Part shown: positions 8,395-60,731 of the stretch, in pieces
Position numbering within the stretch: position 1 is the stretch's first letter
Layout of the letters: every line of letters starts with the position of its first letter
Program-made: the position numbers and the translations under genes
Assembly: GCF_001194135.2 (NCBI RefSeq)
Contig: NC_068982.1
Coordinates: 154,396,221-154,457,117, forward strand
Reading direction: 5' to 3'
Origin: Octopus bimaculoides
Taxonomy: Eukaryota
Length of the DNA stretch: 60,897 nucleotides
Notes under the pieces: model-generated
Told to the model about the DNA's origin: nothing
Seen by the model: the letters and a program-made list of their open reading frames with translations, nothing else
The model's database searches: none

Positions 8395-8520
8395 ACTAGT
8401 TCGGGGGGAGGCGTAAATCGATTACATCGACCCCAGTGCTCAACTGGTACTTATTTTATCGACCTCGAAAAGATGAAAGGCAAAATCGATCTCGGTGGAT
8501 TCTGCCAGCTCGTCGCCTTA
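8395..8520 (-). mobile_element. SINE family 1, internally deleted copy
   Basis: aatcgattacatcgaccccagtgctcaactggtacttattttatcgacctcgaaaagatgaaaggc joins directly to attctgccagctcgtcgcctta (head). Confidence 0.75.
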
Positions 8521-9933: not shown

Positions 9934-10153
9934 AAGGCGGTGAGCTGGCAGAATCGTTACCACGCTGGTAAAAATGCTTAGCATCATTTCGTCTGTCTTT
10001 ATGTTGTAAGGTCAAATTCCACCGAGGTTGACTTTCCCTTTCATTCTTACCAGGTCGATGAAATAAATACCAGTCGAGCATTGATAGCGATGAAATCGAC
10101 GAGCCCCCTTCCACCAAATTTCAGGCTTTATGCTTATAGTAGAAAGAATTATT
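9934..10153 (+). mobile_element. SINE family 1
   Basis: aaggcggtgagctggcagaatcgtta...gtcaaattccaccgaggttgactttccc...aaatttcaggctttatgcttatagtagaaagaattatt. More than a dozen homologous copies or fragments occur in the window. Confidence 0.8.
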
Positions 10154-11879: not shown

Positions 11880-12531
11880 TACTTTTTTTTCCATTGTCCT
11901 TTACAGGCTCAAAGGCAAAGTTAGTATTGGCGGAATTTGAACTCAGTAAGTCAAAAGCCGGATGAGAAACCGCAAAATATTTTCCGATTGTAACGATTCA
12001 GCCAATCCATCGCGCTAAAACAAGATTTTCTGAATCCATGCAGCGACTTAAACAACATGGCCTGTTTTTATGTTACTTTATAACATCTATTGTTTGACAC
12101 TTCAAATGCAGTTTTAATGGGAAGGAAACGACAAAATTGAAAGCTAGGATGAGATGTAAAGACTCTTTACGTTTGAACAACATTATTGCACGCAAGTAGC
12201 TATAGTTGTTGCATCTTTTTCAGTCACAGTTTAAGACTAACCATAAAATTTTCCTCCCTATTGATAATTTATAGGATTAAGCTGTTAAGACATCAATCTG
12301 AAGAGTTTTATCTTTACACTGTTTAAATGCTCTTGAGCTCTTTTGTAGTTTTTATTTTATTTTATTCTATTTTATTCTATTATATGTTCTGTCGATATAC
12401 CATTTATTATCCCCCACTTCATTCAGATATTTCAATCTTCCAAATTTGAAGGCTTCCCCAACTTTGAACAATACTCTGCTTCTCTTTAATAGAACAATAT
12501 TCTTTCCTGTTCTTTCTCCTCNNNNNNNNNN

Positions 12532-29282: not shown

Positions 29283-29490
29283 TTTGGCACAAGGCCAGCA
29301 ATGTTAGGGCGGGGGGTAAGTCGATTACATCTACCCCAGTGCTACAACTGGTACTTATTTTATCGTCTCCGAAAGGATGAACGGTAAAGTCGACCTCGGT
29401 GGAACTTGAACTCAGAACGTAAGGACTGACAAAATGCCGCTAAGCATTTTGTCCGGCGTGTTAACGATTCTACCAGCTTGCCACCTTCGT
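29283..29490 (-). mobile_element. SINE family 1
   Basis: ggcacaaggccagcaatg...aagtcgattacatctaccccagtg...gtcgacctcggtggaacttgaactcagaacgtaa...ttaacgattctaccagcttgccacctt. Confidence 0.8.
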
Positions 29491-32300: not shown

Positions 32301-33524
32301 GGAAATATAAAAAAAGAAAGACAGAAAGAAGGAATAAATATTGAAATAAATATATAAAGAAAAGACAAATAATTATGGAACGAATGAAAAGAATAAAGAA
32401 AAAACAGCAAAAAAATGAATGAAATTTAGAAAGAAAACAAGAAATAATGAAATATAAAACGAATTTCATGAAAGGAACAAAACAGAAAAAAAAGGAATAA
32501 GAAAAAAAGCAAAGCAAACCAAATCAGAACATGACACGGATCCTCGTAATTGTACCTCTGGGGTCGATTTTTCTATAAATGATCCAAGAAGAGAAAGTAT
32601 ATGCATACATTGATAAATTTTACTAAGGCAAAAAATAAAAACCCTTTTCAGAGGTCGAGGAGGAGTGTAGAGGAAGGAGTAGGGTTGGAGAGATGGTTGG
32701 TTGAGAGGAGAGAAAGGGGTATGGGTGGAGAGATAGGAAAGATGGTGGGCTTAGAGTTAGAGTTGAGTGCTGATTTTTGAAAGGTGAAACACCAAACAGA
32801 ACACTAACATTTCGTGTCGCTTTCTGTAAGCTGTGCTAACAAAAAACATTACGTAATATATACACATACACGTATGTGTGTATATGAGTGTGTGTATGAT
32901 ATATGCTTAAGCACACAACTGCATAAATCGTGTGTCTGTGTCTGTGTGTGTCTGTATGTGTATACATGCATTCTAGCTTAGAAACAAGATCTCGATCTGG
33001 GAACTGGTTGATAATTGCCGATAAAAGTCGACCACTATACTCAGCTGAACCTGTTTTGAAAATGAAAGGATTAATTTGATTACGTAGTCCTACATACACA
33101 TAAAAATAGGTGGCGGGGGGGGGGGGGGGGGTTATCGCTGGAACTCTCTTGAACAGAAGTCTTTTCAATCGGTTAAAAACCTGGTGCTAAGGAGCAGTAA
33201 CAATAACTGGCACTCAGTTTTATCGACCCCGAAAGGATGAAGAGTGACGTTCACTTGAGCAGGATTCGAAACCAGAATGTATAGAAAGATGTAACCTAAT
33301 AGCGACAAGATACTTTGTCCGACACTCTACCAATCGTGCTAACCTGTTTCTGTCTTTAATGAGGAAGGTCAAAATTGTCAAAGAGGCCAAGTTTATGCTA
33401 GACGGTATGGTGCAATTTGACGAGGATTTGGCTGTATTACGTAAGAAGTCGAATGATAAATAGTTAGCAGGGAAAAGAACAAATAGTTAGTGAAGAAATT
33501 AATAACTTTTTTTAAAGTTGTAAC

Positions 33525-41164: not shown

Positions 41165-41372
41165 ATTATGGCACGAAGCCTGCAAGTTTGAGGGAAGCAG
41201 GAAACCGATTACCTTGACTTCAGTGATGAATTGATATTTATTCTATCGGCTCTGAGTGGATGAATGGCAAAGTCGACCTCGGCAGAATTTGAACCCAGAA
41301 ACCAAAGAACCAGAAGAAATGCCGTTACGCATTTGATCCGGCGTGGGAATGATTCTGCCAGTTGGCTGTCTT
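41165..41372 (-). mobile_element. SINE family 1 (diverged)
   Basis: ggcacgaagcctgcaag...ggcaaagtcgacctcggcagaatttgaacccagaa...gattctgccagttggctgtctt. Confidence 0.7.
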
Positions 41373-42671
41373 CCGTTTCAGAATTGTTTTGATTTCTAAA
41401 CAGTTTTATTTCTTACTCCAGCAAATAGATATATCTACTTCAGCAATGTAGGGTAGGCTTTACTTCGCTGATGATTCCAAAATAAAGTAGAAATATCTTT
41501 GACGATGTATCAGTCTTGCCATAAAATTTAACGAAAAAATATTATCAGTTATCGATATATACTTCTTTTTTACTCAATATATAGTTTCTATTTTCGAATA
41601 TTTAATGTTCCATATATTGAATATACTGACAACCACCGAAAAACTATGGTCATCCGAGCCATAATTTAATATCTATATTCACTTTGGTATTCTTCGAATG
41701 CGATTATATCGAGCCATCATCCTCAGAAAGTACTGGTTATATCAACCCCAGTACTTTATCTGGCACTTACTTCACGGCAATATAAAGTCAGTACTGGCGT
41801 ATGAAAGATTATTCAGTCGGACGGACTTTAATACCAAAATTTATTTCTTTTCGAATGTATTAGTTAAAAGAAACCCTATTAAACACCCAAACACAAACAC
41901 ATGCACATATACAAACACACTCATATATACCTATATATTTCTTCACACATAACGGGCTTTCACGTAGTTTCCGCCTTTTATCCAGAAGGTTTTTTTAAAT
42001 ATCGCTAATCTGTTGTTGAAGAAACTTGTCCAAAATTTAGCACATTGGAATCACTGCGATGGTTACGATGCAGACTTCTTAAATGAAATAGTCTTACTTT
42101 TTATTTCTGTCAATTTTTTTTCAAATTGAGCTGAAAAATTTAACCTCGATATCTTAATCTACGCTCTTAATGAGCATCGGCTGTTAATATTTATAACGTA
42201 AATATCTGAAGTAAAACAAAGTTTGAGACTTAGGATAAAAATTTTACATATAGACGTGTTTTTGTCCTAGTAAATTTTAAGATTCATCATCATTTCACAA
42301 TATTTCTATTGAGAATGTGACTATTTTTCTAACATATTCTGTGACATCATTACGATCTTACTGTTGTATCTCTTCTCTACAGTTTCTTGTCATGTATTGT
42401 CTTGGGCCCTCATCTATTAACGGAATCGTGAGGGCGCTGACCCGAAACAGACACACGATTGTACTTCGACCGTCCAAAGGTTTTACCTCTTCCACTACTA
42501 CATGCTACTTCAATTTTTTATTGGAAAGCCCTCTCCTAAAGGGTTTTTTTTTTCCTATTAAGTTGCATAAATTAATGCTCGCCCATTAGCGCTAGGTCAA
42601 ATTTAATAACAATACAAAATACCGAATATTACGTCTAATTTAAATCTAATTGAAATTCTTTTCTTTTGCAG

Positions 42672-42851
42672 ATGAAAAAACTTAAACATAGTTGCAGAAA
42701 TAATGGAAGGTCTATGTTTTCCCCTGCACCAGTCTCCCTTTATCCAAAGAAAGACAAATTATCTTCGACAGAGAAGAAACAAATCCAAACAGAATACGGA
42801 CAGTTACAAGAAATGGTTCCAACAATAGCAAACAGACGTCGAGTGACGAAG
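42672..42851 (+). CDS. Coding exon A of an Id/Emc-like HLH protein lacking a basic region (N-terminus, helix 1, loop)
   Basis: Pyrimidine-rich acceptor ttcttttcttttgcag directly before ATG. 180 nt open: MKKLKHSCRNNGRSMFSPAPVSLYPKKDKLSSTEKKQIQTEYGQLQEMVPTIANRRRVTK. Donor AAG|gtataa, phase 0. EYGQLQEMVPTIANRRRVTK resembles the Id/Emc helix1-loop (CYSKLKELVPSIPQNKKVSK type). Confidence 0.85.
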
Positions 42852-42966
42852 GTATAAACACATCACTACTTGTTGACATTGTTATTTTAATTCTTTTTAT
42901 TTTTTTGGTTCCCATAGTTTCCTTACCTTGTATCAATTATCAAGTTTATCCTTCTACTTAAACACT

Positions 42967-43005
<39 letters not shown>

Positions 43006-43445
43006 GTTGCGTGCGTGCGTGTGAATTTGGAGTCCATCGACTAAGTAGCTTTTATCATCTTTACCACACTCTACCACTGCTTGCCAATTTCAGTATTCCT
43101 CTCGATTCTAACTTCTTGCGTTGCTTCTTTCTGCATCTTTCTTTTATCCGTAATATTATGTAAAGCGTACCTGGAGAAAATAACCAACCAGCCAGCCAAC
43201 CAATCAATCAATCACCATTTATATCGGCTATTAGTATATATAGAGAAACGGAAAGTTAAGGCAAAAGTTTTCTCTGTTCTTAAATAACTAAAGTGACTCT
43301 TTTACAATGTAATTGTCCATATACAGCGACATGCGAAATTACAACGTAATTCAATAACTGCATAAACTGAGAATCGATTCCTCGGATGGAGTGCTTACAG
43401 TGGGTTTAGCTTGATTCTCAAAATCCAATTTTCTACTTATTTGTA

Positions 43446-43482
<37 letters not shown>

Positions 43483-43854
43483 TATATAGATAGATAGATA
43501 GATAAATAGATAAACTTACTTGGAAATGGATGCGTGGCGTTCAGTCATATAATGATATAAATAATGTATATATATATATATATATAAATGTGTATGTATG
43601 TGTGTATGTCATTATTCAGTTTTATTTCAAGATTTCTTGCCAACTGAGAAAGAGCCGGCTTCTAACCTAGATCTAAGTCTCATTTCAACAGTACCAACAG
43701 AGTATATTTGTATGTATGTATGTATGTATGTATGTATGTATATGTGCATATTTGTGTGTTTTCTTATGTATGTATGTATGTATATGTGCATATTTGTGTG
43801 TTTTCTTTTATGTATGTATTCTCATGCATATAGTTGCATGCATTGACATGCTCA

Positions 43855-44330
43855 TATATACTTAATAAACTTCGGGAAAGTTTTATAGATTTGCACAGTT
43901 CCAGTGATGGCTTGGATTTGTAGTCTTTGAATCAGTTTTCTCCTTTCTGGTTTTGAGAAGCCTAATTTCTCGAGATAGGTATTTAGGCAGTGTATTACAT
44001 ATATTTCACGGCCCCAATAATTACAGGTATAAACCTGAACTTGCAATTTGGATAGAGTAACAGCAGATTTCTCAATAGTTCAACATAAATTTTCTCTTCT
44101 TTACTGATCTTTAGCTGTATGTATGTATGTATGTATGTATGTATGTGAATATGTATAGTAGTGTAATTCCTGACAGAGTACAAAGTCAGTGTTCTTCCAA
44201 TGTAGTCAGGAGTTTGTGTTGAATGATCCATTGGAAGAACACTGACATAGGTTTTCTCAAAGTTACAGCTTGAGGGTAGTAACTTTGAGAAATCCTTCAA
44301 TTTCATTGGTGCAAAGACAACAGACACCTC
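43855..44330 (-). pseudogene. 3' fragment of an RLE-endonuclease non-LTR retrotransposon (R2/R4-like) in intron 1 of the HLH gene
   Basis: TPDYI...KISKEEKIYVELLRNLLLLYPNCKFRFIPVIIGAVKYM, then YLEKLGFSKPERRKLIQRLQIQAITGTVQIYKTF. This resembles the C-terminal RPDI...EKxxKYxxL...PVVIGALG...LQxxxxxGTxxI signature. Frameshifted and interrupted by (TATG)n. Confidence 0.6.
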
Positions 44331-44386
44331 ACTAGTAAAAACCTTATTATGAAGGGTACTCTCTCTTTCTCTCTCTCACACACACG

Positions 44387-44425
<39 letters not shown>

Positions 44426-44742
44426 ATGTGTTTTCCTTATGTGTTCATTCTGTTGTCCGCAAAAAAAAGTCCACGTTTTTTGATGTACATATATGTATGT
44501 ATACATGCATATGTTCATATATCATTTGTATTTTTATATATGTGTGTGTGTGTCTATATGCATAAAATCTTAAATACATACGCGTAGACATACACTCATT
44601 TATATGCATAAACATATATGAGAAATGCTGATGCGAATTGGTTATTATTTATTGAAACTATTGTTTGCAATGTACATTAATCGGTCCCCATATCGATGAC
44701 GATGATGATGATAATTTTTTTCTTTGTATATCGTTGTTACAG

Positions 44743-44818
44743 AGACAAGTGGTAAGGGAAGCAACTCTTTATATCGACCAATTACATTCAGAATTATTAG
44801 AAAAATTACATCATAATG
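44743..44818 (+). CDS. Coding exon B of the HLH protein (helix 2)
   Basis: Acceptor tttttttctttgtatatcgttgttacag, donor AATG|gtaagt. In frame with exon A, it encodes RQVVREATLYIDQLHSELLEKLHHN plus 1 nt. The VVxEAxxYIxxL pattern is HLH helix 2. Confidence 0.85.
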
Positions 44819-45533
44819 GTAAGTAGTCGCAAGGTCTCCTTCCCTCTCCCTCTGTTTATCTGTCTGCCTCTCTGTCCATTCCTCTCTCTACTGTCCGTCT
44901 CCCTCTTTCTTCCTTAATTTTTATTCTCGATACTATAACTCTGAAGCAATTTTTTTTATTTTTTATAAATCGTATCGATTGCACTTCGAGACATTAAGCT
45001 GTTAATATACAATAAGACATATCGAGATATACACTTCATAACCATACATTACCACATAATTTGAAAACATACATTGTGTAAATAGTCAAATACTATCAAC
45101 ATATACACTATTCAGCCACATATATTAATGAGACATGCTCAACAATAGACATATAAAATAGTCATACTACCGAGATATATGTCTGGAAAAACACAGAAGG
45201 TATGATCTAAAGAGAGAATCTCTACCCGGTCGCTCGATACACTAGAGACGGTACCAGCATTCACCTCAAATTACTCATTGCTGTTTTTGGAAAAGAGAGA
45301 AAACAGAAGGTACACTGGATGTCGTAGTTCACGTCCTGGAAAAGAACATAAATAAGTAAAGGAAAAAGAGGAAGGGGAAAAAAAAAGGATGGTCGCAGCA
45401 TGAACGTCTTTGATCATGCGTCAGAAGAGGAAAAATCACACATGTATGGGGAAAAAAATATAGGACGGTCACTGGTAGAAAAACCTTTTGAGTTTTAGTT
45501 GTGTCGGATGAGAAGCGACATGATTTCGGAGAT

Positions 45534-45567
<34 letters not shown>

Positions 45568-45636
45568 CACGCACTGCACACACACACACACATGCACGTA
45601 CAGCACACACACACATGCATATATGTTCATATATGA

Positions 45637-45668
<32 letters not shown>

Positions 45669-45797
45669 TTGTATACATATATACATATACATATATTAAT
45701 ATATGTATATACATATATATGTATGCATGCATATATATATGTATGTATATATATACATATACGCATCTTAATATATGTATATACATATATATGTATG

Positions 45798-45834
<37 letters not shown>

Positions 45835-45837
45835 CTG

Positions 45838-45887
<50 letters not shown>

Positions 45888-45894
45888 TATATGC

Positions 45895-45928
<34 letters not shown>

Positions 45929-46156
45929 ACATATATTTATATATGGAAATTTGTGTTTGTGTGTATGTTTGTATGTATACATGTGTGCAGAGAAAAAGTA
46001 TACACAACTAAAGAAAGAGTACATGGTACTGATGTAAAGATAGCTTTGCTCTGAGTTTCGTGCCTGAAGGTCTCAGTCGACAGATGAAATGAAAACAGTT
46101 ATCTCCCTAAAGAGACTGCATACACATATACATACATAGATACATACATACATACA

Positions 46157-46192
<36 letters not shown>

Positions 46193-49100
46193 TACATGCA
46201 TACATACAGCTATGCATTTATACATGCATGCATTCATACATACATGAAAAGACATACATTCATATACAAACATAAATACATACATCCAGACGAACATACG
46301 TAAATAAATGCATATATACATGCATACATACATACATGTATACATACATTCATAGATGCACGCACTCATATATACTTACATACATCCATGCATACATACA
46401 TACATGAAAAGACATACATACGTACATTCACACACANNNNNNNNNNNNNNNNNNNNNNNNNNNNNNNNNNNNNNNNNNNNNNNNNNNNNNNNNNNNNNNN
46501 NNNNNNNNNNNNNNNNNNNNNNNNNNNNNNNNNNNNNNNNNNNNNNNNNNNNNNNNNNNNNNNNNNNNNNNNNNNNNNNNNNNNNNNNNNNNNNNNNNNN
46601 NNNNNNNNNNNNNNNNNNNNNNNNNNNNNNNNNNNNNNNNNNNNNNNNNNNNNNNNNNNNNNNNNNNNNNNNNNNNNNNNNNNNNNNNNNNNNNNNNNNN
46701 NNNNNNNNNNNNNNNNNNNNNNNNNNNNNNNNNNNNNNNNNNNNNNNNNNNNNNNNNNNNNNNNNNNNNNNNNNNNNNNNNNNNNNNNNNNNNNNNNNNN
46801 NNNNNNNNNNNNNNNNNNNNNNNNNNNNNNNNNNNNNNNNNNNNNNNNNNNNNNNNNNNNNNNNNNNNNNNNNNNNNNNNNNNNNNNNNNNNNNNNNNNN
46901 NNNNNNNNNNNNNNNNNNNNNNNNNNNNNNNNNNNNNNNNNNNNNNNNNNNNNNNNNNNNNNNNNNNNNNNNNNNNNNNNNNNNNNNNNNNNNNNNNNNN
47001 NNNNNNNNNNNNNNNNNNNNNNNNNNNNNNNNNNNNNNNNNNNNNNNNNNNNNNNNNNNNNNNNNNNNNNNNNNNNNNNNNNNNNNNNNNNNNNNNNNNN
47101 NNNNNNNNNNNNNNNNNNNNNNNNNNNNNNNNNNNNNNNNNNNNNNNNNNNACATACATACATACATGCATATGGCATACATACGTATGTACGTACATGT
47201 ATACATACGTATGTACGCACATGCATACATACATGCATGCATACATACATACATACATACATACATACATAAACCTGTGTGTGTTCTTACTTTCTCCAAT
47301 CCCGCAACCTCATCTCTGCTTTGCAGTTTTACTTTCCACTTTCTCTTATTTGTTAATTTTTTTTTTTCTTTTTGTTCGTGTTCTCGTTGTTGCTTAACCC
47401 CAGGTTGTCCTGATGCAGCATCTTAAAATCACACTTCTTCTAACCGTGACCATTCCAGATTGAGTGTGTCTACGAGTATAACATCTGATATGTTTACTTT
47501 TCTTAAGTTGATAGGTTATTGATTGAATGAGTGCTGAGTGCTAGCTGCTATTTCTACCAGATCGATAGTGCTTGTAGAAGCTTTCTCATAACTACATAAT
47601 GATGGCGTTGGAGACAGTGGTGGTGGTCATCGTCGTAGTCGTGGTGGTAGTGGAGGGTTTGTTTGTGGTGGTGTGCGACTGTTTTTTTGTTTTGTTTTTT
47701 TTCTTCTTGTTAAACCCTAGATTTGCTCTGGTCAGGTAGACTATAATATCTGATATCGAATATACCCTTGTCTTAAGACAGAAGGTTGTGATTGTTAGGC
47801 AGATTTAGCTGCTATGTTTAGCAAGTCGAACAACGTTAAAGATGCTGATTTGTGGGCGCGTGGATGCTGGGATTAACGGCGGTAGTTGCGGTAGATGAGG
47901 CTGTTAGTGGTTACCATGTTGATGATGGGAGTTGTGATGATGATAGGGTGAGGGCAGTATTAGATGATGACTACCGCAAACAGATGGTTTCTTTCCCAGC
48001 ACCTTGCTGAAAAAATGTCAGTGACGTATCCACAGCTCAAGTGTTAGCGTTTAACTATCTCAGCCGACAGCGCGTGTGGAACGTGTGTGAGTACTGTGGA
48101 GTGGGTGGGTGTATTTGGATGGATGATGGCTGACAGGAGGAATAAGTGAATGGGTGGCCTCTTTTATTTTCGCTTTGTGTTTACGTGTGTGTGTGTCTGT
48201 ATGTGTCTGTGTGCGTGCGTGCGTGCATGTATGCGACTGCATACAAACCTGTGTGGATTCTCAGAGAATGAACGAGAGGCAGAGGCGAGCTAGGAATAAT
48301 AAAAGGAACATAGATAGGTAGAAAGAAAAGAAAAACAAAGAGGGGGAGAAGAAGAGGGAGAGAAAAGAGAGAGAGAGAAAGAGGGTCGGAGACAGAGACG
48401 GTATTCAGGCGGTGATTTTGTATATTCATTGGGTGACTGTTGTATTAGTGTGAGAATGGTAGAACTGGGTATCGGGTGCATGACCCGAACAAATAAAGGA
48501 TCATAGCACTTCTAACGGGTGGCAAGAGAAAATATTTTAGAGGTTTGTTTGACGAGAAAAGAGGGCTGCCATATGGCAATAGGCCGTCTTGGCGAGTCTG
48601 TAAGTGCGCGTGTTTGTATGTATATGTATATGTGCATGAGCGTATACACGCACACACTCACATATATATATATACGTGTATGACTATACGTATTTGTCCA
48701 TAGGTGCGCCTTTGTGTTTGTATACGATATCATGTATGCGTTTGATTTGCGCATGCGTGTTTCACAGATAGAATAGCTTAGCTGAAGTCAGCGTGGGAAC
48801 ATTGGACCTTTGTGTTCTCTACACAAATCTGAACACGTGTAAAGGTAGATTGATGTACATGAAACATCGTCAATTCTACTAGGTGCCTCTATATTTGTCC
48901 GTCTGTCAATCACAGAAAGCTATTGTGGTACTAACCTTTGTATCAAGTGAGCAGCTGGTATTATCATTAGGTGAATTGAGTAAATACATGAATAAAAGCA
49001 TAATATTATTTTTTATGAATTTGGAGGATATTCTACTGTACTCCTACGTACTATGTACCCATCTGCATTTATACCTATCTACTTATCAATATATTCCATC

Positions 49101-49527
49101 TATTTCCTCTCTCTGCTTCTCTCTCTCTCACTCACACACACACTTACACACACACACGCGCGTATACTAATATTATGTATGTGTGTACGAATGTATGTAT
49201 ATTTCCTCCCTATATAGCTATCCCTTTACAATAGCATTCTGTATGTATAATAATGGCTAAGACAAGTATTCAGATAATTGTGTCGAAGACCTTAAATATT
49301 TGGGAAAAGATGATTGCTTCACTCGAACCAGAAGACAAGTCAGTTCTTTACTAAATAGTTAAAACAGAAATCACTTTGACAGAATGGAGTTTCGATGTGT
49401 TTCTGTATTCGTAAAAATGGTTTCGTATTTGCGCAGTGAACCATAAAGGATGAACGTCAAAGTCGACTTCATCGAGATTTAATCGCTGAATATAACAGAC
49501 ACAACTAAATAATATTTTCTACCAAAA

Positions 49528-49940
49528 AGGCGGTGAGCTGGCAAAAACGTTAGTACACAGGGCGAAATATCTAGCGGTATTTCGTCTGCCGTTACGATCT
49601 GAGTTCAAATTCCGCCAAAGTCGACTTTGCCTTTCCTCCTTTAGGGGGTTAATAAATTAAGTACCAGTTACGCACTGGGGGTCAATGTAATCGACTTAAT
49701 CCCTTTGCCTGTCCTTGTTTGTCCCCTCTGTGTTTAGCCACTTGTGGGCAATAAAGAAATAAACGTTAGCACACAGGGCGTGTCTTTACGTTCTGAGTTC
49801 AAATTCCGCCGAGGTCAACTTTGTCTTTCATCCTTTTGGGGTCGATAAATTAAGTACCAGTTGCGTACTGGGGTCGATCTAATCGAATGCCCTCCCCCCC
49901 CAAAAAAAAAATTTCGGGCCTTTTGCCTAGAGTAGAAAAA
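49528..49940 (+). mobile_element. Composite of two family 1 SINE units with different 3' tails, inside one 17-bp TSD
   Basis: TSD aatattttctaccaaaa (49511-49527) and aatattttctgccaaaa (49941-49957). Unit 1 ends gtttgtcccctctgtgtttagccacttgtgggcaataaagaaataa; unit 2 ends ccctccccc...tttcgggccttttgcctagagtagaaa. Confidence 0.75.
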
Positions 49941-50201
49941 AATATTTTCTGCCAAAAGCAGAAGGAACATATTGTCAACTACTCCGACCCCTCTTACTTA
50001 GTTGGTACTCTGTTTCATTGAATTCAAATAAAGGAAATGTTGACTACGATGGAATTTGAAATCAGAACGTAGGGGAATGTAATTAAATGTTACATTTTGT
50101 TTAAGTTAGCTACTCAATGGACTGTAGGTGCAGGCGTAGCTATGTGATAAGAAACTTGATTCCCAACCACATGGTTCCAGGTTCAGTGGCACCTTGAGCA
50201 T

Positions 50202-50510
50202 GGTGTCCCACAAGGCACTGTGTTAGGCTCACTCTTGTTCCTTATCTACATAAATGACATCATCAGGATCCTTAGATACAATGACATAAAAAATTTCCGC
50301 GGATGACTAAGCTTCTGAAGGTTGTCGACAGGATGGAAGACCGGACAAATCTTCAATCGGACCTAGTTGCTGTTATCCAATGGGAGTAGAAACATAACAA
50401 GCAACTGAACGAGAACAAGTTTGAGATAATTCACTTTGGTAAAGAGGCTGCACTTAAACAACCATATATTCTTCCTTTAGGCGAACACCACACGGCATCA
50501 AACAAGACGT
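50202..50510 (+). pseudogene. CR1/L2-group LINE reverse transcriptase fragment
   Basis: GVPQGTVLGSLLFLIYINDII...F/ADD/KLLKVVDRMEDRTNLQSDLVAVIQWE*KHNKQLNENKFEIIHFGK. Canonical PQG...YINDL...FADD motifs with frameshifts and a stop. Confidence 0.85.
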
Positions 50511-51532
50511 TTCATCCATTTCGAGTTCGTGAATAAACTGAGACCATCAACGTCTTCGAAACTTCCAGTCGTTCTCTCTCTCTCTCTCTGGGGCCAGCTT
50601 ATCCGGAGAAAAGACGTCGGTGGGAACCAAATAAGTGTTATTTCAGAAATAAAATATTCAGAGTCGCCATCCGTTCAGAAAGAACAATTTATTCTCAGTC
50701 TAAGATTTCTGAGATTGCCTTGTGTCATTTGTCTATTAATAGTAAAATCGTACATAGCTGTGGAAATTTCGAGAAACGTATTGTTCAGCCAATGAATATC
50801 CTTGTAACATTTAATTGCTTTATTTATTTATTTGTTTATTTGTTTATTTATTACATGCTTGTTAATTACAATTCTTTAAATCTTTATGAGTAGGCTAAAG
50901 AGGAAATTATGAATAAATAAATAAACAAATAAATAAATGAATGAATGAGTAAAAACAATGAAAATATCGTGGCAAAAAGAAAACAAAACATTTGCAAATT
51001 TGAAAAGGAAACAATATTGATGGCATTTGACTCTGAAATGAAGTAGGAGAAAATCGTGTTTATATGTTTAATGATTTTCAAGTTAAATAGAAAATAGCAA
51101 ACATTCGTATTTTGTTTCATAGTTTTGTTGCTATGTTTTTGGATTGTTCGTCACGAATAAAGTTTCCTATCAACATTTTATTACAACGATACGTTGCTAG
51201 GATAAAAGTAAACCCTCAGTTTACATAAATTTCTATTTCGTGAAATTACAAACAGCATTCTTCTTCTTCTTCTCTTTCTCTACTCCTTCTCTTTTTTTGT
51301 CTGTCTGTCTGTCTGTCTTTGATTTTCTGTCTTTCTGTCTTTTTTCTTTATCTTTTTTTATTTTTTAAAAATTTTTGCCGTTCTCTTTTCCTCCCTCGAT
51401 TTCCTTCTTCCCTTGCTTGCTTTCCGTTCTCTTCCCTCTCTCTCTCCTTCGTCTGAGTTTCTCTCCTCTCTCACTCTTTTTACCCAAACACGCACACGCA
51501 CACGCACGCACACACGCATGCATCTTACTCTG

Positions 51533-51563
<31 letters not shown>

Positions 51564-52307
51564 CACTCTCTATATATAAATATATAGACAGAAAGATGGG
51601 GAGAAAGAGAGAGCAGTTATCTATATTGTTAGTACTGAGTCCTTTTTGCAACATAATCTCCTTGATCCTTGATTCAAATGTTCCGCTATTACACACAGGC
51701 ACGCACCACCCACATATAAGCATACACACACAGACACACACACATACACACACACACACACATACACATACACACATACACGCACACACACACACACACA
51801 CATAAATATATAAAGTACAAGTGTGTTTGAATTTCATCTTTTATATTAATATGTTCTTATTATTCCTTTGGGATCTTTTCTGTCTGACTACCACTTTTCA
51901 ATTTCTTCAATTTTAGTTCCAATTCATTTCATATTTGGTGTATTGGTGTAGTTTTGTATGGTAATTATTGACATGAATTTCATTTTCGTTATAAATCAAT
52001 AAATAAAGAGTCAATAGCTTTTAAAATCTGCCAATTTTAAAATTTCCATAACTGCAGCTAAACAGAAAAGACCCTTCTTTTATGTCTAGTTTGGAACTAC
52101 CATTCCGTTTCAAGGCTTTCTCAACCTCAACTTCTAAATGAAGTAGTGATAGTAATGTATTGTTACTGCACATTGTAGTCGGTACTACACGTTCGCGGGA
52201 ATACTGCTGTAACTTATAAAGCGTTATGGCCGGGCTAAAGACTGTGTGACCGTATGCCGCTAAGCTTTTCAACAAACATTTTTCTGTCTGATTTTGTCTC
52301 GTGTTTC

Positions 52308-52308
<1 letters not shown>

Positions 52309-52365
<57 letters not shown>

Positions 52366-52379
52366 GTTATTATTATTAT
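52309..52379. repeat. (ATT)n microsatellite
   Basis: Read directly. Confidence 0.95.
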
Positions 52380-53008
52380 GTACCGCCTAGTCTACTAGAT
52401 GAAATTTTACTGGAGAATGGCTTCTTCAGACTGAGAAGTAAGATGGCAATTTGCATTTTGTCTGGGTGTATTGTACTCGAACACATTTTTTTAATAATTC
52501 AACCATTACGACTGCATAAGTTATGCCGATATATTGCTAATTATCCCTCACACACGATGGACCTAAATATACCATTACCAGCTAAGACTACAGAAGTGGT
52601 TGATTGATGAAGCCGATGATCGGCAAAATTTTCAAATCACTTACAAACTTCTCAGTTTTACACGTATACAAATACACACACTTATATAGGGTTATACACA
52701 CATACATACACTTTCGCATGCGTACATTATTCATTCTCAACATTTTGTACGTTTTCTCTCCTTCATTTGATGGAGGCCACTAGTTTAATTACTAGTCATT
52801 CGATTGTGTGTGTGCGTGTGTGTGCATGTGTGTAGGGGGGGGAGGTGCATATATATATGAACAGCGTGATCAACTTTCCAGAATGTTGTTTGCATAAAAT
52901 TTCTTTATAACAAAAATATTCAAGAAATTTTATTTTTATGTCGTTTTATTTTGTTATTGATCACAGTTTTAACATCTACTTTTTTTTCATTTCTTCTTTT
53001 AATTCTAG

Positions 53009-53118
53009 GATTCTCTGATTTTGACATGAATCTGAACAGCTTGAACAACTTGGTAATAAACCTTATGCAGAATAATTTAGATCTGAATAAACCCAGTAAT
53101 ACGTTTGTTAACAAGTGA
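53009..53118 (+). CDS. Probable terminal coding exon C of the HLH protein
   Basis: Strong acceptor tttttttcatttcttcttttaattctag. Phase 1 matches exon B: G|GA then FSDFDMNLNSLNNLVINLMQNNLDLNKPSNTFVNK*, TGA at 53116-53118. Total CDS 366 nt = 121 aa. It was the best downstream acceptor found by eye; no transcript evidence. Confidence 0.55.
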
Positions 53119-54172
53119 ACAGATACATATATACATACATACATACATATATACATATGTATGTATGTATACACACACACACACGTACACACACACACAC
53201 ACACACGCACACACACACAAACAGATATATATACAAAAACAAAACATGAATATTGGAAAGAAAAGAAATGTAAGGTTTTGCTTTTTTGTGATTAAAACGA
53301 AGATTTGCCAATGAAGGATTTTCTACGAACACCGTGATTCAAATAGGACTTGATATTTGTAAAATGCAGTATATTAGAAGAAAAAAAAATTACATGGACA
53401 TTCATGATTGGTGGTGGTACATTAAAAAATTCATGATGACATAGCAGGAAGAATTAATGTCCACCTACATTGTACAATTCCACAATTTCAAGATCTTAAA
53501 TATCTGTAAATCAAACACCATTTGTGTGTGTGTGTGTGTGTGTCCGTGTGTATGTGTGTGTGTAAGTATGCATGTATGTATATACATTCATTGACATAAG
53601 CACATATATAATATATATCATATCATATATATATATGTATGTATGTATATATATATATATATANNNNNNNNNNNNNNNNNNNNNNNNNNNNNNNNNNNNN
53701 NNNNNNNNNNNNNNNNNNNNNNNNNNNNNNNNNNNNNNNNNNNNNNNNNNNNNNNNNNNNNNNNNNNNNNNNNNNNNNNNNNNNNNNNNNNNNNNNNNNN
53801 NNNNNNNNNNNNNNNNNNNNNNNNNNNNNNNNNNNNNNNNNNNNNNNNNNNNNNNNNNNNNNNNNNNNNNNNNNNNNNNNNNNNNNNNNNNNNNNNNNNN
53901 NNNNNNNNNNNNNNNNNNNNNNNNNNNNNNNNNNNNNNNNNNNNNNNNNNNNNNNNNNNNNNNNNNNNNNNNNNNNNNNNNNNNNNNNNNNNNNNNNNNN
54001 NNNNNNNNNNNNNNNNNNNNNNNNNNNNNNNNNNNNNNNNNNNNNNNNNNNTATTTCACTTTCTGTGAAAAGCATCTTGTGGGAAGGGAGTTCAGAAGTA
54101 CAGGGTTATAGATAAGGTAAACTAGGGAAATATTAAATAATGAAAATTAAATCCATATTTTTTTTTTACATC

Positions 54173-56699: not shown

Positions 56700-56899
56700 A
56701 CAAGGTCTCACATTTGGGGGAGGGTATTAAGTCGATTATATCGACCCCAGTGCGTAACTGGCACGTAGTTAATCGACCCCGAAAGGATGAACAGAAAAGT
56801 CAACCCCGGCGGAATTTGAACTCTGAACGTAGCGACGGGCGAAATACCGCTAAGCATTTCGTCCTGCGTGCTAACGACTCTGCCAGCGCACCGCCTTTT
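56700..56899 (-). mobile_element. SINE family 1, well preserved
   Basis: aagtcgattatatcgaccccagtgcgtaactgg...ggcggaatttgaactctgaacgtagcgacgggcgaaataccgctaagcatttcg...ctgccagcgcaccgcctttt. Confidence 0.85.
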
Positions 56900-59229: not shown

Positions 59230-60731
59230 AGTCCTTTGCCGCTACGTTCTGAGTTCAAATTCTGCCGAGGTCGACTCTGCCTTTCATCATTTCGAGTCGA
59301 TAAAAATGAGTACCAGTCAAGCACTGAAGTCAAAGTAATTGACTAGCCCCCACCACCACCACCACCACTACCACGCGGCAGCCGCGGTGGTGGTAGTAGT
59401 AGTGGCAGCGGCGGCGTTGGTGGTGGTGGTGGTGGTGGTGGTAGCAGCAGCAGCGCTTTGCATGAAAGTCTTTAAACTGTCAAAATATATTTTCAAAATG
59501 ACTGATTAAATTGTTGTTCTTATTGTATTTAGTCTTTTTCTGTCGTGGCATGTTGCTTCATTGCCGTAGTTACTATCATCGTTATAATCGTAGTCGTCGT
59601 AGTTGTGGTATTCGTTGTTGTTTGTAAAGAATTCTATATAATAGACAGTTGTAGAACCTTTGTGTCAAGTCAAAGGAAACTAATATATTATTCAGGTAGA
59701 ATGTCGGATATAATTTTATTTTATGAATATCAACAAACGATAAGAATACGAAGAGCAGCAACTACGACAAGAACAAAAACAAAAACAATAAACAGAGTCA
59801 AATCATGTGCTTTAAACTGAAAGTAAATATTTTATGACTCAAAGAAGGAACAGGTACATTTTCTCATTCTTGTATAGACATTTTTTCCATTAATCCATTA
59901 ATAAAAGATTATGGGGTTGGAAATCGTGGAAAATTTCGGTTATGACAATAATACATTCAAGTGGTGAAGAACATCACCAAGTAGGTTGTTGCTTTTGTTA
60001 TTTTTGTTGCTATTGCTACTGCTGCTGTTGCCGCCGCCGCCGCTGCTGCTGCTGCTGCTGCTGTTGCTGTTGTAGTTGTTGTTTAACCGCCAATTAACCT
60101 TTGTCAAGAGAAAAGATAACCAAAGATGTTCGAACATTGGTCGTCTGTGTTATTTCTCGAAAAAAGTTTTAGCGTTTTAGCTAAAAGTCAAAAAAGCGGA
60201 GTCTGCAACTCTTTGCATGATCGCCACGACAGGTACAGAAAAAAAGAGAAAGTTCTCAAAGAATCCGAAACTTGGGCCAAAAGCCAACGACAGAGTGAGT
60301 TCCATTAAATGCACCCTACTATTTACCTGAGACTGCATTGCTCAATGTGTTGTTAAAGACAGTAGGGTGAAAGGGAGATTTAGATGTTAATTTTATCAGA
60401 ACGCTCTGTCATCTAGAGGCTTCAGGATTGGCTTATATTCGATCATTTGGAGAGTGAAGTGTGAGTAGAAAAATATTAGCTGACATGTGTGTGTATTTTT
60501 CTGCTATGTGTTTCTCAGTTGAAGGCCAGTCAATTTGAGAAAGAGGTCAACACCACGGCGTATTAGGCATTAGACTAGTTAATATTTCTCTTCTGTTAGA
60601 AATTTACCATGTAACTTAGCCTCGTTGTGAATGGAACTTGATAAACGGAAACCACACACACACACACACACAAATATACATGTGTGTGTACGTATGATTA
60701 CACACATACACATACATACATACATACATAC

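What the first reader, a model, noticed from the sequence alone, without database searches (positions are those of the whole stretch)
42672..53118. Split small HLH gene without a DNA-binding basic region: candidate orphan dominant-negative HLH
Seen: three phase-compatible exons with canonical splice sites give a 121-aa protein containing IQTEYGQLQEMVPTIANRRRVTK|RQVVREATLYIDQLHSELLEKL. Counting back from the conserved VP, the positions of the bHLH E-R-x-R DNA-contact motif hold S-S-T-E. Established: HLH proteins lacking the basic region (Id/Emc, group D) sequester E-proteins and other bHLH partners. Inference: Y in helix 1 and the loop are Id/Emc-like, but helix 2 (VVREATLYIDQLH) differs from Id/Emc (ILQHVIDYILDL). 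The gene may belong to a separate, poorly characterised protostome or lophotrochozoan family and act as an unannotated brake on bHLH-driven programs. The ORF track misses it because exons B and C are under 60 aa.
Basis: partly seen in the sequence, partly recalled or inferred. Interest (0 to 1): 0.8.

Follow-up and report, generated by a model that had tools for sequence, protein, structure and literature searches.

The report
Octopus HLH-only gene, Id-like paralog
This is a real, conserved three-exon octopus gene for a 121-residue helix-loop-helix protein that has lost the DNA-contact residues; it is not an Id/Emc gene but a cephalopod-specific copy of a little-studied protostome HLH family, and it probably works by tying up partner transcription factors.

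Summary
The assembly gap lies inside intron 2 and matches a microsatellite in a gap-free relative, so the reading frame is unaffected. NCBI models of the same length and exon plan exist in Octopus sinensis (98% identical) and Argonauta hians (84%). dN/dS against Argonauta is 0.14. A cuttlefish ortholog is present as a spliced ~1.3 kb mRNA in larval RNA-seq.

Pfam HLH is hit above its cut-off, but only on helix 1-loop-helix 2. The E-R-x-R positions hold S-S-T-E.

It is not Id/Emc: it scores 19 bits against an Emc profile and 55 bits against a profile of a separate small-HLH family. That family occurs in molluscs, annelids, a nemertean, chelicerates, a myriapod and crustaceans, and all named members are uncharacterised. 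Lottia, Capitella and Daphnia have both Emc and this family.

Octopus also has a canonical family member 264 kb away, with a long basic helix. The window gene is therefore a coleoid-specific paralog that lost the basic helix.

Id-like sequestration of partners is the most likely mechanism but is untested. Whether the family equals the published "Pearl" family could not be settled.

The parts
42670..42671 (+). AG of a likely 3' splice site directly in front of the start codon (ttcttttgcAG|ATG), implying an untranslated 5' exon further upstream
   Evidence: The same AG|ATG arrangement is seen in Argonauta (ccattAG|ATG) and in the Patella family member (ctttcAG|ATG). The upstream exon was not located.
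42672..42851 (+). Exon A: codons 1-60. Holds the N-terminal tail, the degenerate 'basic' positions (S31 S32 T33 E34), helix 1 and the loop; ends ...RRRVTK, donor GT
   Evidence: 97% identical to O. sinensis and 85% to Argonauta. Hit by 43 family proteins in tblastn.
42852..44742 (+). Intron 1 (1891 nt), phase 0, at the loop/helix 2 border
   Evidence: The same site and phase occur in Argonauta, the octopus canonical paralog, Tachypleus and both Capitella genes.
44743..44818 (+). Exon B: helix 2 (RQVVREATLYIDQLHSELLEKLHHN + first base of G86)
   Evidence: 100% identical to O. sinensis. Hit by 81 family proteins.
44819..53008 (+). Intron 2 (8190 nt as assembled), phase 1; contains the assembly gap 46437-47151
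   Evidence: The gap flanks are collinear with O. sinensis. The homologous phase-1 intron in a Gly codon is present in Patella and Tachypleus.
47887..48081 (.). Conserved non-coding element inside intron 2. Single copy, with invariant core CAAACAGATGGTTTCTTTCCCAGCA...TGACGTATCCACA (E-boxes CAGATG at 47981 and CAAGTG at 48038; TGACG at 48022). Candidate enhancer.
   Evidence: 80% identical and collinear in Argonauta. Three-species alignment. No RNA structure signal (z 0.39 and 0.02), one compensatory pair among 58 predicted pairs, and no Rfam hit there. Absent from the paralog's intron.
53009..53118 (+). Exon C: codons 86-121 plus TGA. Encodes a predicted third helix (MNLNSLNNLVINLMQNNL).
   Evidence: 99% identical to O. 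sinensis. dN/dS 0.07 against Argonauta. It aligns with the family-wide 'N-[IV]-x-x-[LFV]-V-x-x-[LM]-M' helix. AF2 predicts helix 94-112.

Best explanation
The locus is a functional three-exon gene for a 121-aa HLH-only protein. It is the coleoid-cephalopod-specific, divergent paralog of a small (b)HLH family. That family is spread across protostomes and is related to, but separate from, Emc/Id.

The canonical family gene of octopus lies about 264 kb downstream on the same strand in O. sinensis. It keeps a long, Arg-rich helix in front of helix 1. The window gene kept the dimerisation core and a third helix, but it lost that basic helix and the C-terminal PS[YF] motif.

Most likely mechanism (inferred, not shown): it pairs through its HLH with other (b)HLH proteins. 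Candidates are its canonical sister, the E-protein/Daughterless homolog and class II bHLHs. The resulting dimers would have only one, or no, DNA-reading helix, so the protein would titrate partner activity as Id/Emc and plant 'microProteins' do.
For: Gene reality:
- Exact spliced ORF.
- Orthologous 121-aa models in O. sinensis and Argonauta with the same junctions.
- The exons are islands of conservation, and dN/dS is 0.14.
- The cuttlefish ortholog P0003 sits on intronless ~1.3 kb contigs from at least 4 runs. One of them is Sepia esculenta larval RNA-seq.

HLH fold:
- Pfam HLH is above its cut-off.
- AF2 gives pLDDT 78.9 with helices 32-48, 60-84 and 94-112.
- Nearly all Foldseek matches, and all of the better ones, are (b)HLH chains; Id1 superposes at 1.3-1.4 A over 40-41 aligned columns.

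No E-box reading head:
- The Pfam match starts at profile position 15.
- Positions 9, 10 and 12 are S, S and E. There are 4 K/R and 2 D/E in positions 1-13, with Pro at position 3.
- The predicted helix 1 starts at position 10. In the canonical paralog it runs through the whole basic region with pLDDT 90-96.

Family placement:
- 58 relatives were found by exhaustive HMMER.
- The window HLH scores 55 bits against the family profile built without cephalopods, 19 bits against Emc and 15 against other bHLH.
- Intron positions are shared.

Paralogy:
- Canonical octopus member P0036/P0100.
- Same chromosome and strand, 263,940 bp apart.
- Same exon plan.

Id-likeness of the family: the family profile hits Id1/Id2 at E 6e-8, far ahead of ASCL1 at 5e-4.
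Against: - No experiment or octopus RNA-seq was available, so expression of this gene in octopus rests on gene models and on the cuttlefish transcript.
- No partner is known, and heterodimer modelling was not possible with the tools.
- The region before helix 1 still carries five lysines (K26, K27, K29, K35, K36), so weak or non-specific DNA contact, or a nuclear localisation role, cannot be excluded.
- The whole family lacks Glu at position 9 yet keeps a very basic helix. The ancestral activity is therefore itself unknown, and the 'loss of DNA binding' step is an inference.
- NJ bootstrap for family monophyly is only 51% on 33 columns.
Confidence: 0.6

Rival explanations
1. It is simply the octopus ortholog of Emc/Id (group D), fast-evolving.
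For: - Best solved-structure relatives are Id1/Id2.
- It is small, has Tyr in helix 1, and aligns to Id without gaps over 33 residues.
- NCBI auto-names some family members 'ID-4-like'.
Against: - It scores 19 bits against an Emc profile on which true Emc proteins from human to Lottia, Capitella and Daphnia score 70-84. It scores 55 bits on the other family's profile.
- Lottia, Capitella and Daphnia have a canonical Emc (..LLQHVIDYILDLE) as well as a member of this family.
- In NJ the Emc clade excludes it (78% bootstrap), and a family+Emc grouping gets only 16%.
Confidence: 0.03
2. It is a DNA-binding or positively acting atypical bHLH. As a homodimer, or with its canonical sister, it would contact DNA through the lysine-rich stretch before helix 1, rather than acting as an inhibitor.
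For: - Five lysines remain at residues 26-36.
- The canonical family has a long basic helix, so the family may bind some non-E-box site.
- A conserved third helix suggests a function beyond plain sequestration.
Against: - None of the E9/R10/R12 contacts is present.
- Acidic residues and a Pro interrupt the stretch.
- The predicted helix starts only at position 10.
- The cuttlefish ortholog has a single basic residue in positions 1-13, so basic character is not conserved within this paralog clade.
Confidence: 0.2
3. Its HLH and third helix are used for something other than bHLH partner control, for example binding a non-HLH protein, or regulating localisation or turnover.
For: - The tail helix is under the strongest constraint (dN/dS 0.07) and has no counterpart in Id.
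- All named family members are uncharacterised.
Against: - The invariant residues are the classical HLH dimer-core positions: L45, P50, E66, Y70, I71 and L74.
- All real structural matches are HLH dimers.
Confidence: 0.12
4. It is a chance ORF, a pseudogene or a gene-prediction artefact.
For: - The exons are short, and exon C lies 8 kb away across an assembly gap.
- No octopus transcript was seen here.
Against: - Conservation of all three exons and their splice sites in three octopod genomes.
- dN/dS of 0.14.
- A spliced cuttlefish mRNA.
- Family-wide intron positions.
Confidence: 0.02

Closest known systems
Id / Extramacrochaetae (bHLH group D)
   Same: - Small protein whose only recognised domain is an HLH.
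- Lacks the E-R-x-R DNA contacts.
- Tyr in helix 1 and the 'LVP' end of helix 1.
- Same loop length, with the loop ending in V-[ST]-K.
- Id1/Id2 are the best solved relatives.
- The presumed mode of action is sequestration of partners.
   Different: - Helix 2 is VVREATLYIDQLH (family: VIEEA[IV][RK]YIDELH), not ILQHVIDYIxDLQ.
- 19 bits against the Emc profile, where true Emc proteins score at least 70.
- Emc and this family coexist in Lottia, Capitella and Daphnia.
- There is a conserved third helix downstream.
- There is an intron at the loop/helix 2 border. From memory, Id genes have none inside the HLH; this was not tested here.
Unnamed protostome small-HLH family: O. bimaculoides LOC106878238, Lottia LOTGIDRAFT_169505, Capitella CAPTEDRAFT_225014, plus Tachypleus, Uloborus, Centruroides, Strigamia, Daphnia, Penaeus and Lineus 'uncharacterized proteins'. 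Possibly the 'Pearl' family of Gyoja et al. 2012.
   Same: - HLH signature E-Y-x-x-L...V-P...K...E-A-x-x-Y-I-D-x-L-H.
- 55 bits on the family profile, within the members' range of 52-80.
- Phase-0 intron after the loop Lys and a phase-1 intron in a Gly after helix 2.
- The third helix.
- No member has Glu at bHLH position 9.
   Different: - The window protein, with its Argonauta and cuttlefish orthologs, has lost the Arg/Lys-rich helix extension.
- It has lost the C-terminal E-x-x-R-x-x-P-S-[YF] motif.
- The helix 2 start changed from KVTVIEE to KRQVVRE.
- It forms its own clade with 84% bootstrap.
Plant HLH microProteins (PRE/ILI/KIDARI) and the microProtein concept in general
   Same: A short protein that derives from a transcription-factor family, keeps the dimerisation domain, lacks the DNA-reading part, and is thought to titrate its relatives. 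There is a weak Pfam bHLH_ILI hit of 13 bits, below its cut-off.
   Different: There is no specific homology beyond the shared HLH fold. The analogy is functional only and untested.

Membership tests
HLH superfamily (Pfam PF00010) | Score above Pfam's gathering cut-off on the HLH model | tested here: met
   24.9 bits against a 20.7 cut-off, residues 37-75 on profile positions 15-53. All 44 aligned family members hit PF00010.
HLH superfamily (Pfam PF00010) | Two amphipathic helices joined by a loop, superposable on solved HLH dimers | tested here: met
   The AF2 model has helices 32-48 and 60-84 with pLDDT 89-96. Nearly all Foldseek matches, and all of the better ones, are (b)HLH chains. Id1, MYF5 and MAX superpose at 0.8-1.4 A over about 40 aligned columns. 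E-values are weak because the domain is small.
E-box-binding bHLH (groups A/B) | Glu at position 9 and Arg at positions 10 and 12/13 of the basic region | tested here: not met
   S31, S32, (T33), E34 and K35 occupy positions 9-13. The Pfam alignment does not cover profile positions 1-14.
E-box-binding bHLH (groups A/B) | At least 5 basic residues in a continuous helical basic region. This criterion comes from the bHLH classification literature, cited from memory. | tested here: not met
   There are 4 K/R and 2 D/E in positions 1-13, with Pro at position 3. The predicted helix starts at position 10.
Emc/Id (group D) | HLH without functional basic region | tested here: met
Emc/Id (group D) | Emc-type HLH signature (…LVPx[IL]Px…[ILV][ILV]Q[HR]VIDYIxDL[QE]), measured as the score on a profile of 11 Emc HLH segments from Simionato 2007 | tested here: not met
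   19.1 bits, where true Emc segments score 70-84 bits.
Emc/Id (group D) | Orthology: one lineage, not coexisting with a separate Emc gene | tested here: not met
   Lottia (Lg49 and LOTGIDRAFT_169505) and Capitella (Cc51 and CAPTEDRAFT_225014) have both. In Daphnia, Emc (Dp34/35) is from D. pulex and the family member is from D. galeata. Octopus's own Emc could not be retrieved.
Protostome small-HLH family (canonical octopus member LOC106878238) | Score on the family HLH profile built without cephalopod sequences, within the members' range | tested here: met
   55.2 bits, with members ranging from 51.7 to 79.7. It falls in the family clade in NJ, with only 51% bootstrap.
Protostome small-HLH family (canonical octopus member LOC106878238) | Shared intron positions: phase 0 after the loop Lys, and phase 1 in a Gly after helix 2 | tested here: met
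   Octopus, Argonauta, the canonical octopus paralog, Tachypleus and Capitella share intron 1. Patella, Tachypleus and the octopods share the phase-1 intron.
Protostome small-HLH family (canonical octopus member LOC106878238) | Arg/Lys-rich helix directly before helix 1 | tested here: not met
   Typical members have 4-8 K/R and usually no acidic residue. P0036 has a continuous helix 14-41. In the window protein this stretch is interrupted and only partly helical.
Protostome small-HLH family (canonical octopus member LOC106878238) | C-terminal E-x-x-R-x-x-P-S-[YF]-x-x-x-[RK] motif | tested here: inconclusive
   The window tail ...NKPSNTFVNK aligns only loosely. The motif is absent in the cuttlefish ortholog.
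'Pearl' HLH family (Gyoja et al. 2012; placed in group D by Bao et al. 2017, PMC5381572) | Clustering with named Pearl sequences in a phylogeny | not testable with these tools
   No Pearl sequence was accessible.

Indirect points for: the reported distribution is bivalve, annelid, spider and Biomphalaria; Pearl is placed next to Emc; and Capitella is reported to have a paralog cluster. I find a tandem pair in Capitella.

Indirect points against: Pearl is reported as missing in limpets and present in cnidarians. This family is present in Lottia and Patella, and Nematostella's Emc-like orphan Nem49 scores only 8 bits.

The most novel reading that the evidence does not exclude
The gene is a coleoid-cephalopod innovation. 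It would be a natural 'microProtein', born by local duplication of a bHLH-like gene and loss of the basic helix, whose main job is to titrate its own parent gene 264 kb away, and perhaps E-proteins as well. The parent family would then be a protostome-wide sister of Id/Emc that has not been functionally studied and has escaped the standard bHLH classifications.
Probability: 0.3. Interest if true: 0.65.

Novelty: new member of a known kind. Interest (0 to 1): 0.45.

Why it matters
HLH proteins without a DNA-reading head are potent switches of differentiation; Id and Emc control neurogenesis, myogenesis and stemness.

If this reading holds, protostomes outside the insects carry a second, unstudied family of that general type. 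Coleoid cephalopods, whose nervous system is the most elaborate among invertebrates, would have added a further copy that shed what was left of the basic helix. That gives a concrete and cheap target for work on cephalopod neurogenesis and cell-type evolution.

It would also be a clean natural example of a transcription-factor duplicate turning into a putative inhibitor.

The finding is not a new principle. The fold, the presumed mechanism and even the gene model (in sister species) already exist in public data.

Tried and rejected
1. Hidden exon in the assembly gap. Rejected: the O. sinensis counterpart is about 190 bp of microsatellite.
2. A second HLH gene or paralog inside the window. None found: tblastn with 97 family proteins hits only exons A, B and C.
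3. The conserved intronic block as a miRNA or structured RNA, or as an alternative exon.
   - There is no fold signal (z 0.39 and 0.02), essentially no covariation and no Rfam family.
   - Splicing exon B to the CAG at about 48004 would give only ...NAPC*. Conservation extends equally on both sides, so an enhancer is more likely. Exon use is not excluded.
4. The Rfam E-value scan of 40-56 kb gave only sub-threshold mir-297/466/3149-type hits on (TG/CA/TA)n microsatellites. These are artefacts.
5. Identity with 'Pearl'.
   - Gyoja 2012 is not held, and the Bao 2017 supplements are not held.
   - The acoel paper's supplement has no Pearl sequences.
   - Searches for gene IDs 169505 and 225014 and for the LOC numbers found nothing useful.
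   - Left open.
6. Cnidarian membership. The Nematostella bHLH table of Simionato 2007 contains no family member, and the Emc-like orphan Nem49 scores 8 bits.
7. Retrieving octopus Emc. 
9. RicA/YmcA phmmer hits (E about 0.02) were dismissed as coiled-coil composition matches.

Full report
**1. The observation**

- Exon A is 42672-42851, exon B is 44743-44818 and exon C is 53009-53118, all on the + strand.
- Both introns have GT...AG borders.
- The spliced ORF is 366 nt and encodes 121 aa: MKKLKHSCRNNGRSMFSPAPVSLYPKKDKLSSTEKKQIQTEYGQLQEMVPTIANRRRVTK|RQVVREATLYIDQLHSELLEKLHHN|GFSDFDMNLNSLNNLVINLMQNNLDLNKPSNTFVNK*.
- Intron 1 is phase 0. Intron 2 is phase 1.
- The ATG itself follows ttcttttgcAG, a likely acceptor, so a non-coding 5' exon probably lies upstream. 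It was not located.

**2. The gap**

- The N run 46437-47151 is inside intron 2.
- The window is collinear with the gap-free O. sinensis locus L001 on both sides of the gap.
- The corresponding O. sinensis stretch is about 190 bp of (ACAT)n-like microsatellite.
- The orthologous genes of O. sinensis and Argonauta contain no N at all.
- The gap therefore hides no exon and does not affect the frame.

**3. Is it a gene?**

- A word-indexed search of 5.8 billion proteins found a 121-aa 'uncharacterized protein LOC115232397' in O. sinensis (98% identical) and a 121-aa Argonauta hians protein (84%).
- Both genomic loci have the same three exons and splice sites.
- Against O. sinensis the CDS has 6 differences in 366 nt. 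The 300-nt intron flanks differ by 14-23%.
- At Octopus-Argonauta distance, the only collinear blocks that still align are the three exons and one intronic element.
- Nei-Gojobori dN/dS against Argonauta is 0.14 (dS 0.64). By region it is 0.19 for the N-terminus, 0.14 for the HLH and 0.07 for the exon C tail.
- A 132-aa ortholog (P0003, 46% identical) lies as one uninterrupted ORF on ~1.3 kb contigs.
  - The contigs were assembled independently from at least four sequencing runs and end near an AATAAA.
  - One run, SRR20545811, is Sepia esculenta larval RNA-seq.
  - The cuttlefish ortholog is therefore transcribed and spliced.
- A related 90-aa product (P0013) reads through into intron sequence right after ...HVTK. 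This marks the same intron site.
- No octopus transcript data could be consulted.

**4. What the protein is**

- Pfam HLH (PF00010) is hit at 24.9 bits against a gathering score of 20.7, but only on profile positions 15-53. That is helix 1-loop-helix 2 without the basic part.
- P50 corresponds to profile position 28. On that numbering, the E9-R10-x-R12 contacts are S31-S32-T33-E34.
- Positions 1-13 hold 4 K/R and 2 D/E, with Pro at position 3.
- AlphaFold2 with the family alignment gives mean pLDDT 78.9 and helices 32-48, 60-84 and 94-112.
- Nearly all Foldseek matches against the PDB, and all of the better ones, are (b)HLH chains. Id1, MYF5 and MAX superpose at 0.8-1.4 A over about 40 aligned columns. 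The E-values are weak, as expected for a 40-residue domain.

**5. The family**

- An exhaustive HMMER search of 1.8 billion cluster representatives gave 58 hits at E<1e-3, all 78-340 aa.
- The hits share three features:
  - R-E-Y-x-[KR]-L-R-x-M-V-P-S-[IV]-A-x-K-x-K-V-S-K-V-T-V-I-E-E-A-[IV]-[RK]-Y-I-D-E-L-H-x-A-L;
  - a downstream amphipathic helix (…N-[IV]-x-x-[LF]-V-x-x-[LM]-M…);
  - in most members, a C-terminal E-x-x-R-x-x-P-S-[YF]-…-R-R.
- Named members come from:
  - gastropods, including Lottia, Patella, Haliotis, Pomacea and Biomphalaria;
  - bivalves (Solemya, Mactra) and a chiton;
  - annelids (Capitella, Paralvinella) and a nemertean (Lineus);
  - a horseshoe crab, a spider, scorpions and a mite;
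  - a centipede, Daphnia, a shrimp, krill and a copepod.
- Every name is 'uncharacterized', 'BHLH domain-containing' or an automatic 'ID-4-like'.
- I saw no insect, deuterostome or cnidarian member. Absence was not tested systematically.
- None of the 44 aligned members has Glu at bHLH position 9; it is Lys in 17 and Arg in 12.

**6. Not Emc/Id**

- The supplement of Simionato et al. 2007 (PMC1828162) supplies canonical Emc HLH segments from human, amphioxus, sea urchin, Drosophila, Daphnia, Lottia and Capitella. All have ...[IL][IL]QHVIDYIxDL[QE].
- I built three profiles on the same ungapped 33 columns. The window HLH scores:
  - 55.2 bits on the family profile, built without cephalopods (members score 51.7-79.7);
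  - 19.1 bits on the Emc profile (Emc proteins score 70-84);
  - 15.2 bits on a mixed bHLH profile.
- Lottia, Capitella and Daphnia possess both an Emc and a member of this family. The two families are therefore paralogous, at the latest since the protostome ancestor.
- NJ trees on these columns recover the family (51% bootstrap), the Emc clade (78%) and the cephalopod trio (84%). A family+Emc grouping gets 16%.
- The family is nevertheless the closest thing to Id among solved structures: the family profile hits Id1/Id2 at E 6e-8, against ASCL1 at 5e-4.

**7. A linked canonical paralog**

- One deep hit, P0036, is O. bimaculoides LOC106878238 (139 aa). Its O. vulgaris copy is auto-named 'ID-4-like', and its O. 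sinensis copy is LOC115229687.
- P0036 is a textbook family member: ...ARRRVRLHLRRLRHREYSKLRTLVPSVANNNKVSK|VTVIEEAIKYIDSLH…NVKEVVCQMM…EKKRKIPSF…RRR.
- In O. sinensis it lies on the same chromosome and strand as the window gene's ortholog, 263,940 bp downstream.
- It has the same three-exon plan, including a long second intron.
- In its AF2 model, helix 1 runs from residue 14 to 41 with pLDDT 90-96, through the entire basic stretch. In the window protein the helix starts only at position 10.
- The window gene is therefore a divergent duplicate that lost the basic helix and the C-terminal motif.
- A cuttlefish ortholog exists, so the duplication predates the octopod-decapod split.

**8. Gene-structure support for family membership**

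- The phase-0 intron directly after the loop lysine is present in the window gene, Argonauta, the canonical octopus paralog, Tachypleus and both Capitella genes.
- The phase-1 intron in a Gly codon after helix 2 is present in the octopods, Patella and Tachypleus. Patella has lost intron 1.

**9. Mechanism**

Shown:
- an intact HLH dimer core (the invariant residues L45, P50, E66, Y70, I71, L74);
- no E-box contact residues;
- a truncated pre-helix;
- purifying selection;
- a basic-helix-bearing sister gene nearby.

Inferred:
- The protein dimerises with (b)HLH partners and yields complexes that lack a full pair of DNA-reading helices. This is the Id/Emc or microProtein logic.
- Candidate partners are the canonical sister, the E-protein homolog and class II bHLHs.

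The conserved third helix has no Id counterpart, and its role is unknown. The alternative that the lysine-rich stretch still touches DNA is not excluded.

**10. Name of the family**

Bao et al. 2017 (PMC5381572) place the 'Pearl' family of Gyoja et al. 2012 in group D beside Emc. They report it from Biomphalaria, oysters, Capitella (four copies, clustered), cnidarians and a spider, but as missing in limpets.
- Points that fit: my family matches in most respects, including a tandem pair in Capitella 9.7 kb apart.
- Points that do not fit: the family is present in Lottia and Patella, and I found no cnidarian member.
- No Pearl sequence was accessible, so identity remains open. I put it at roughly even odds.

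**11. Verdict**

- Three corrections apply:
  - It is not an orphan, because it has a family and a linked paralog.
  - It is already modelled as an uncharacterised protein in two sister species.
  - The inhibitory function is untested.
- It is a new, uncharacterised member of a known kind of regulator, with a moderately interesting evolutionary twist.

Noticed in passing
window 47887-48081: A single-copy block in intron 2 is 80% identical and collinear in Argonauta. It has an invariant core that carries a proneural-type E-box (CAGATGG at 47981), a second E-box (CAAGTG at 48038) and a CRE-like TGACGTA (48022). There is no RNA-structure signal. It may be an enhancer through which bHLH factors regulate this HLH gene.
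   Followed up: partly
window 8414-8499, 9934-10074, 11905-11982, 29317-29487, 33205-33285, 41258-41299, 49525-49886, 56723-56899, 59237-59344: There are about nine copies, on both strands, of an interspersed repeat with a tRNA-like box B (GAGTTCAAATTCCGCC). It looks like a tRNA-derived SINE. The copy at 49525-49886 is a tandem dimer. ARAGORN finds no intact tRNA gene in the window.
   Followed up: partly
window 44376-53610 (e.g. 45600-46400, 47152-47283, 48607-48681, 53122-53228): Dozens of sub-threshold Rfam hits to mir-297, mir-466, mir-3149, mir-1277 and others fall on (TG/CA/TA)n microsatellites. All are far below gathering scores. They are artefacts of simple repeats, not miRNA genes.
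   Followed up: yes
whole window: The window has 15 assembly gaps, 36% G+C and abundant microsatellites. No other protein-coding exon was recognised by family tblastn or among ORFs of at least 100 aa, so the region is gene-poor. Nucleotide identity to O. sinensis is 88%. O. bimaculoides against O. sinensis at the paralog locus is 91%. The window is therefore probably from O. bimaculoides or an equally distant Octopus species.
   Followed up: partly
L001 / L010 (O. sinensis CM016860.1, 112,062,654-112,073,558 and 112,337,498-112,352,390): The window gene's ortholog and the canonical family paralog (LOC115229687) lie 263,940 bp apart on the same strand. Both have a short first intron and a long second one (8.5 kb and 12.9 kb). 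This looks like an old local duplication.
   Followed up: yes
L011/L012 (Capitella teleta KB296161.1): Two family genes (CAPTEDRAFT_225014 = P0075, and P0043) sit in tandem 9.7 kb apart. Both have the phase-0 intron after the loop Lys. This is reminiscent of the 'Pearl' paralog cluster reported for Capitella by Bao et al. 2017.
   Followed up: partly
family alignment A2 / A6, C-termini: Most non-cephalopod-specific members end in a conserved E-[KR]-x-[RQ]-[KR]-x-P-S-[YF]-[LM]-x-x-x-[RK]-[RK] motif of unknown function. It could be a partner-docking, degradation or localisation signal. It is lost or degenerate in the window protein.
   Followed up: no
P0041 (Pomacea, 340 aa), P0074 (Elysia, 448 aa), P0072 (Plakobranchus, 323 aa): Some database members are much longer and carry extra Pfam domains, for example a 7TM receptor domain in P0041. 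These are probably fused gene models rather than real domain architectures.
   Followed up: no
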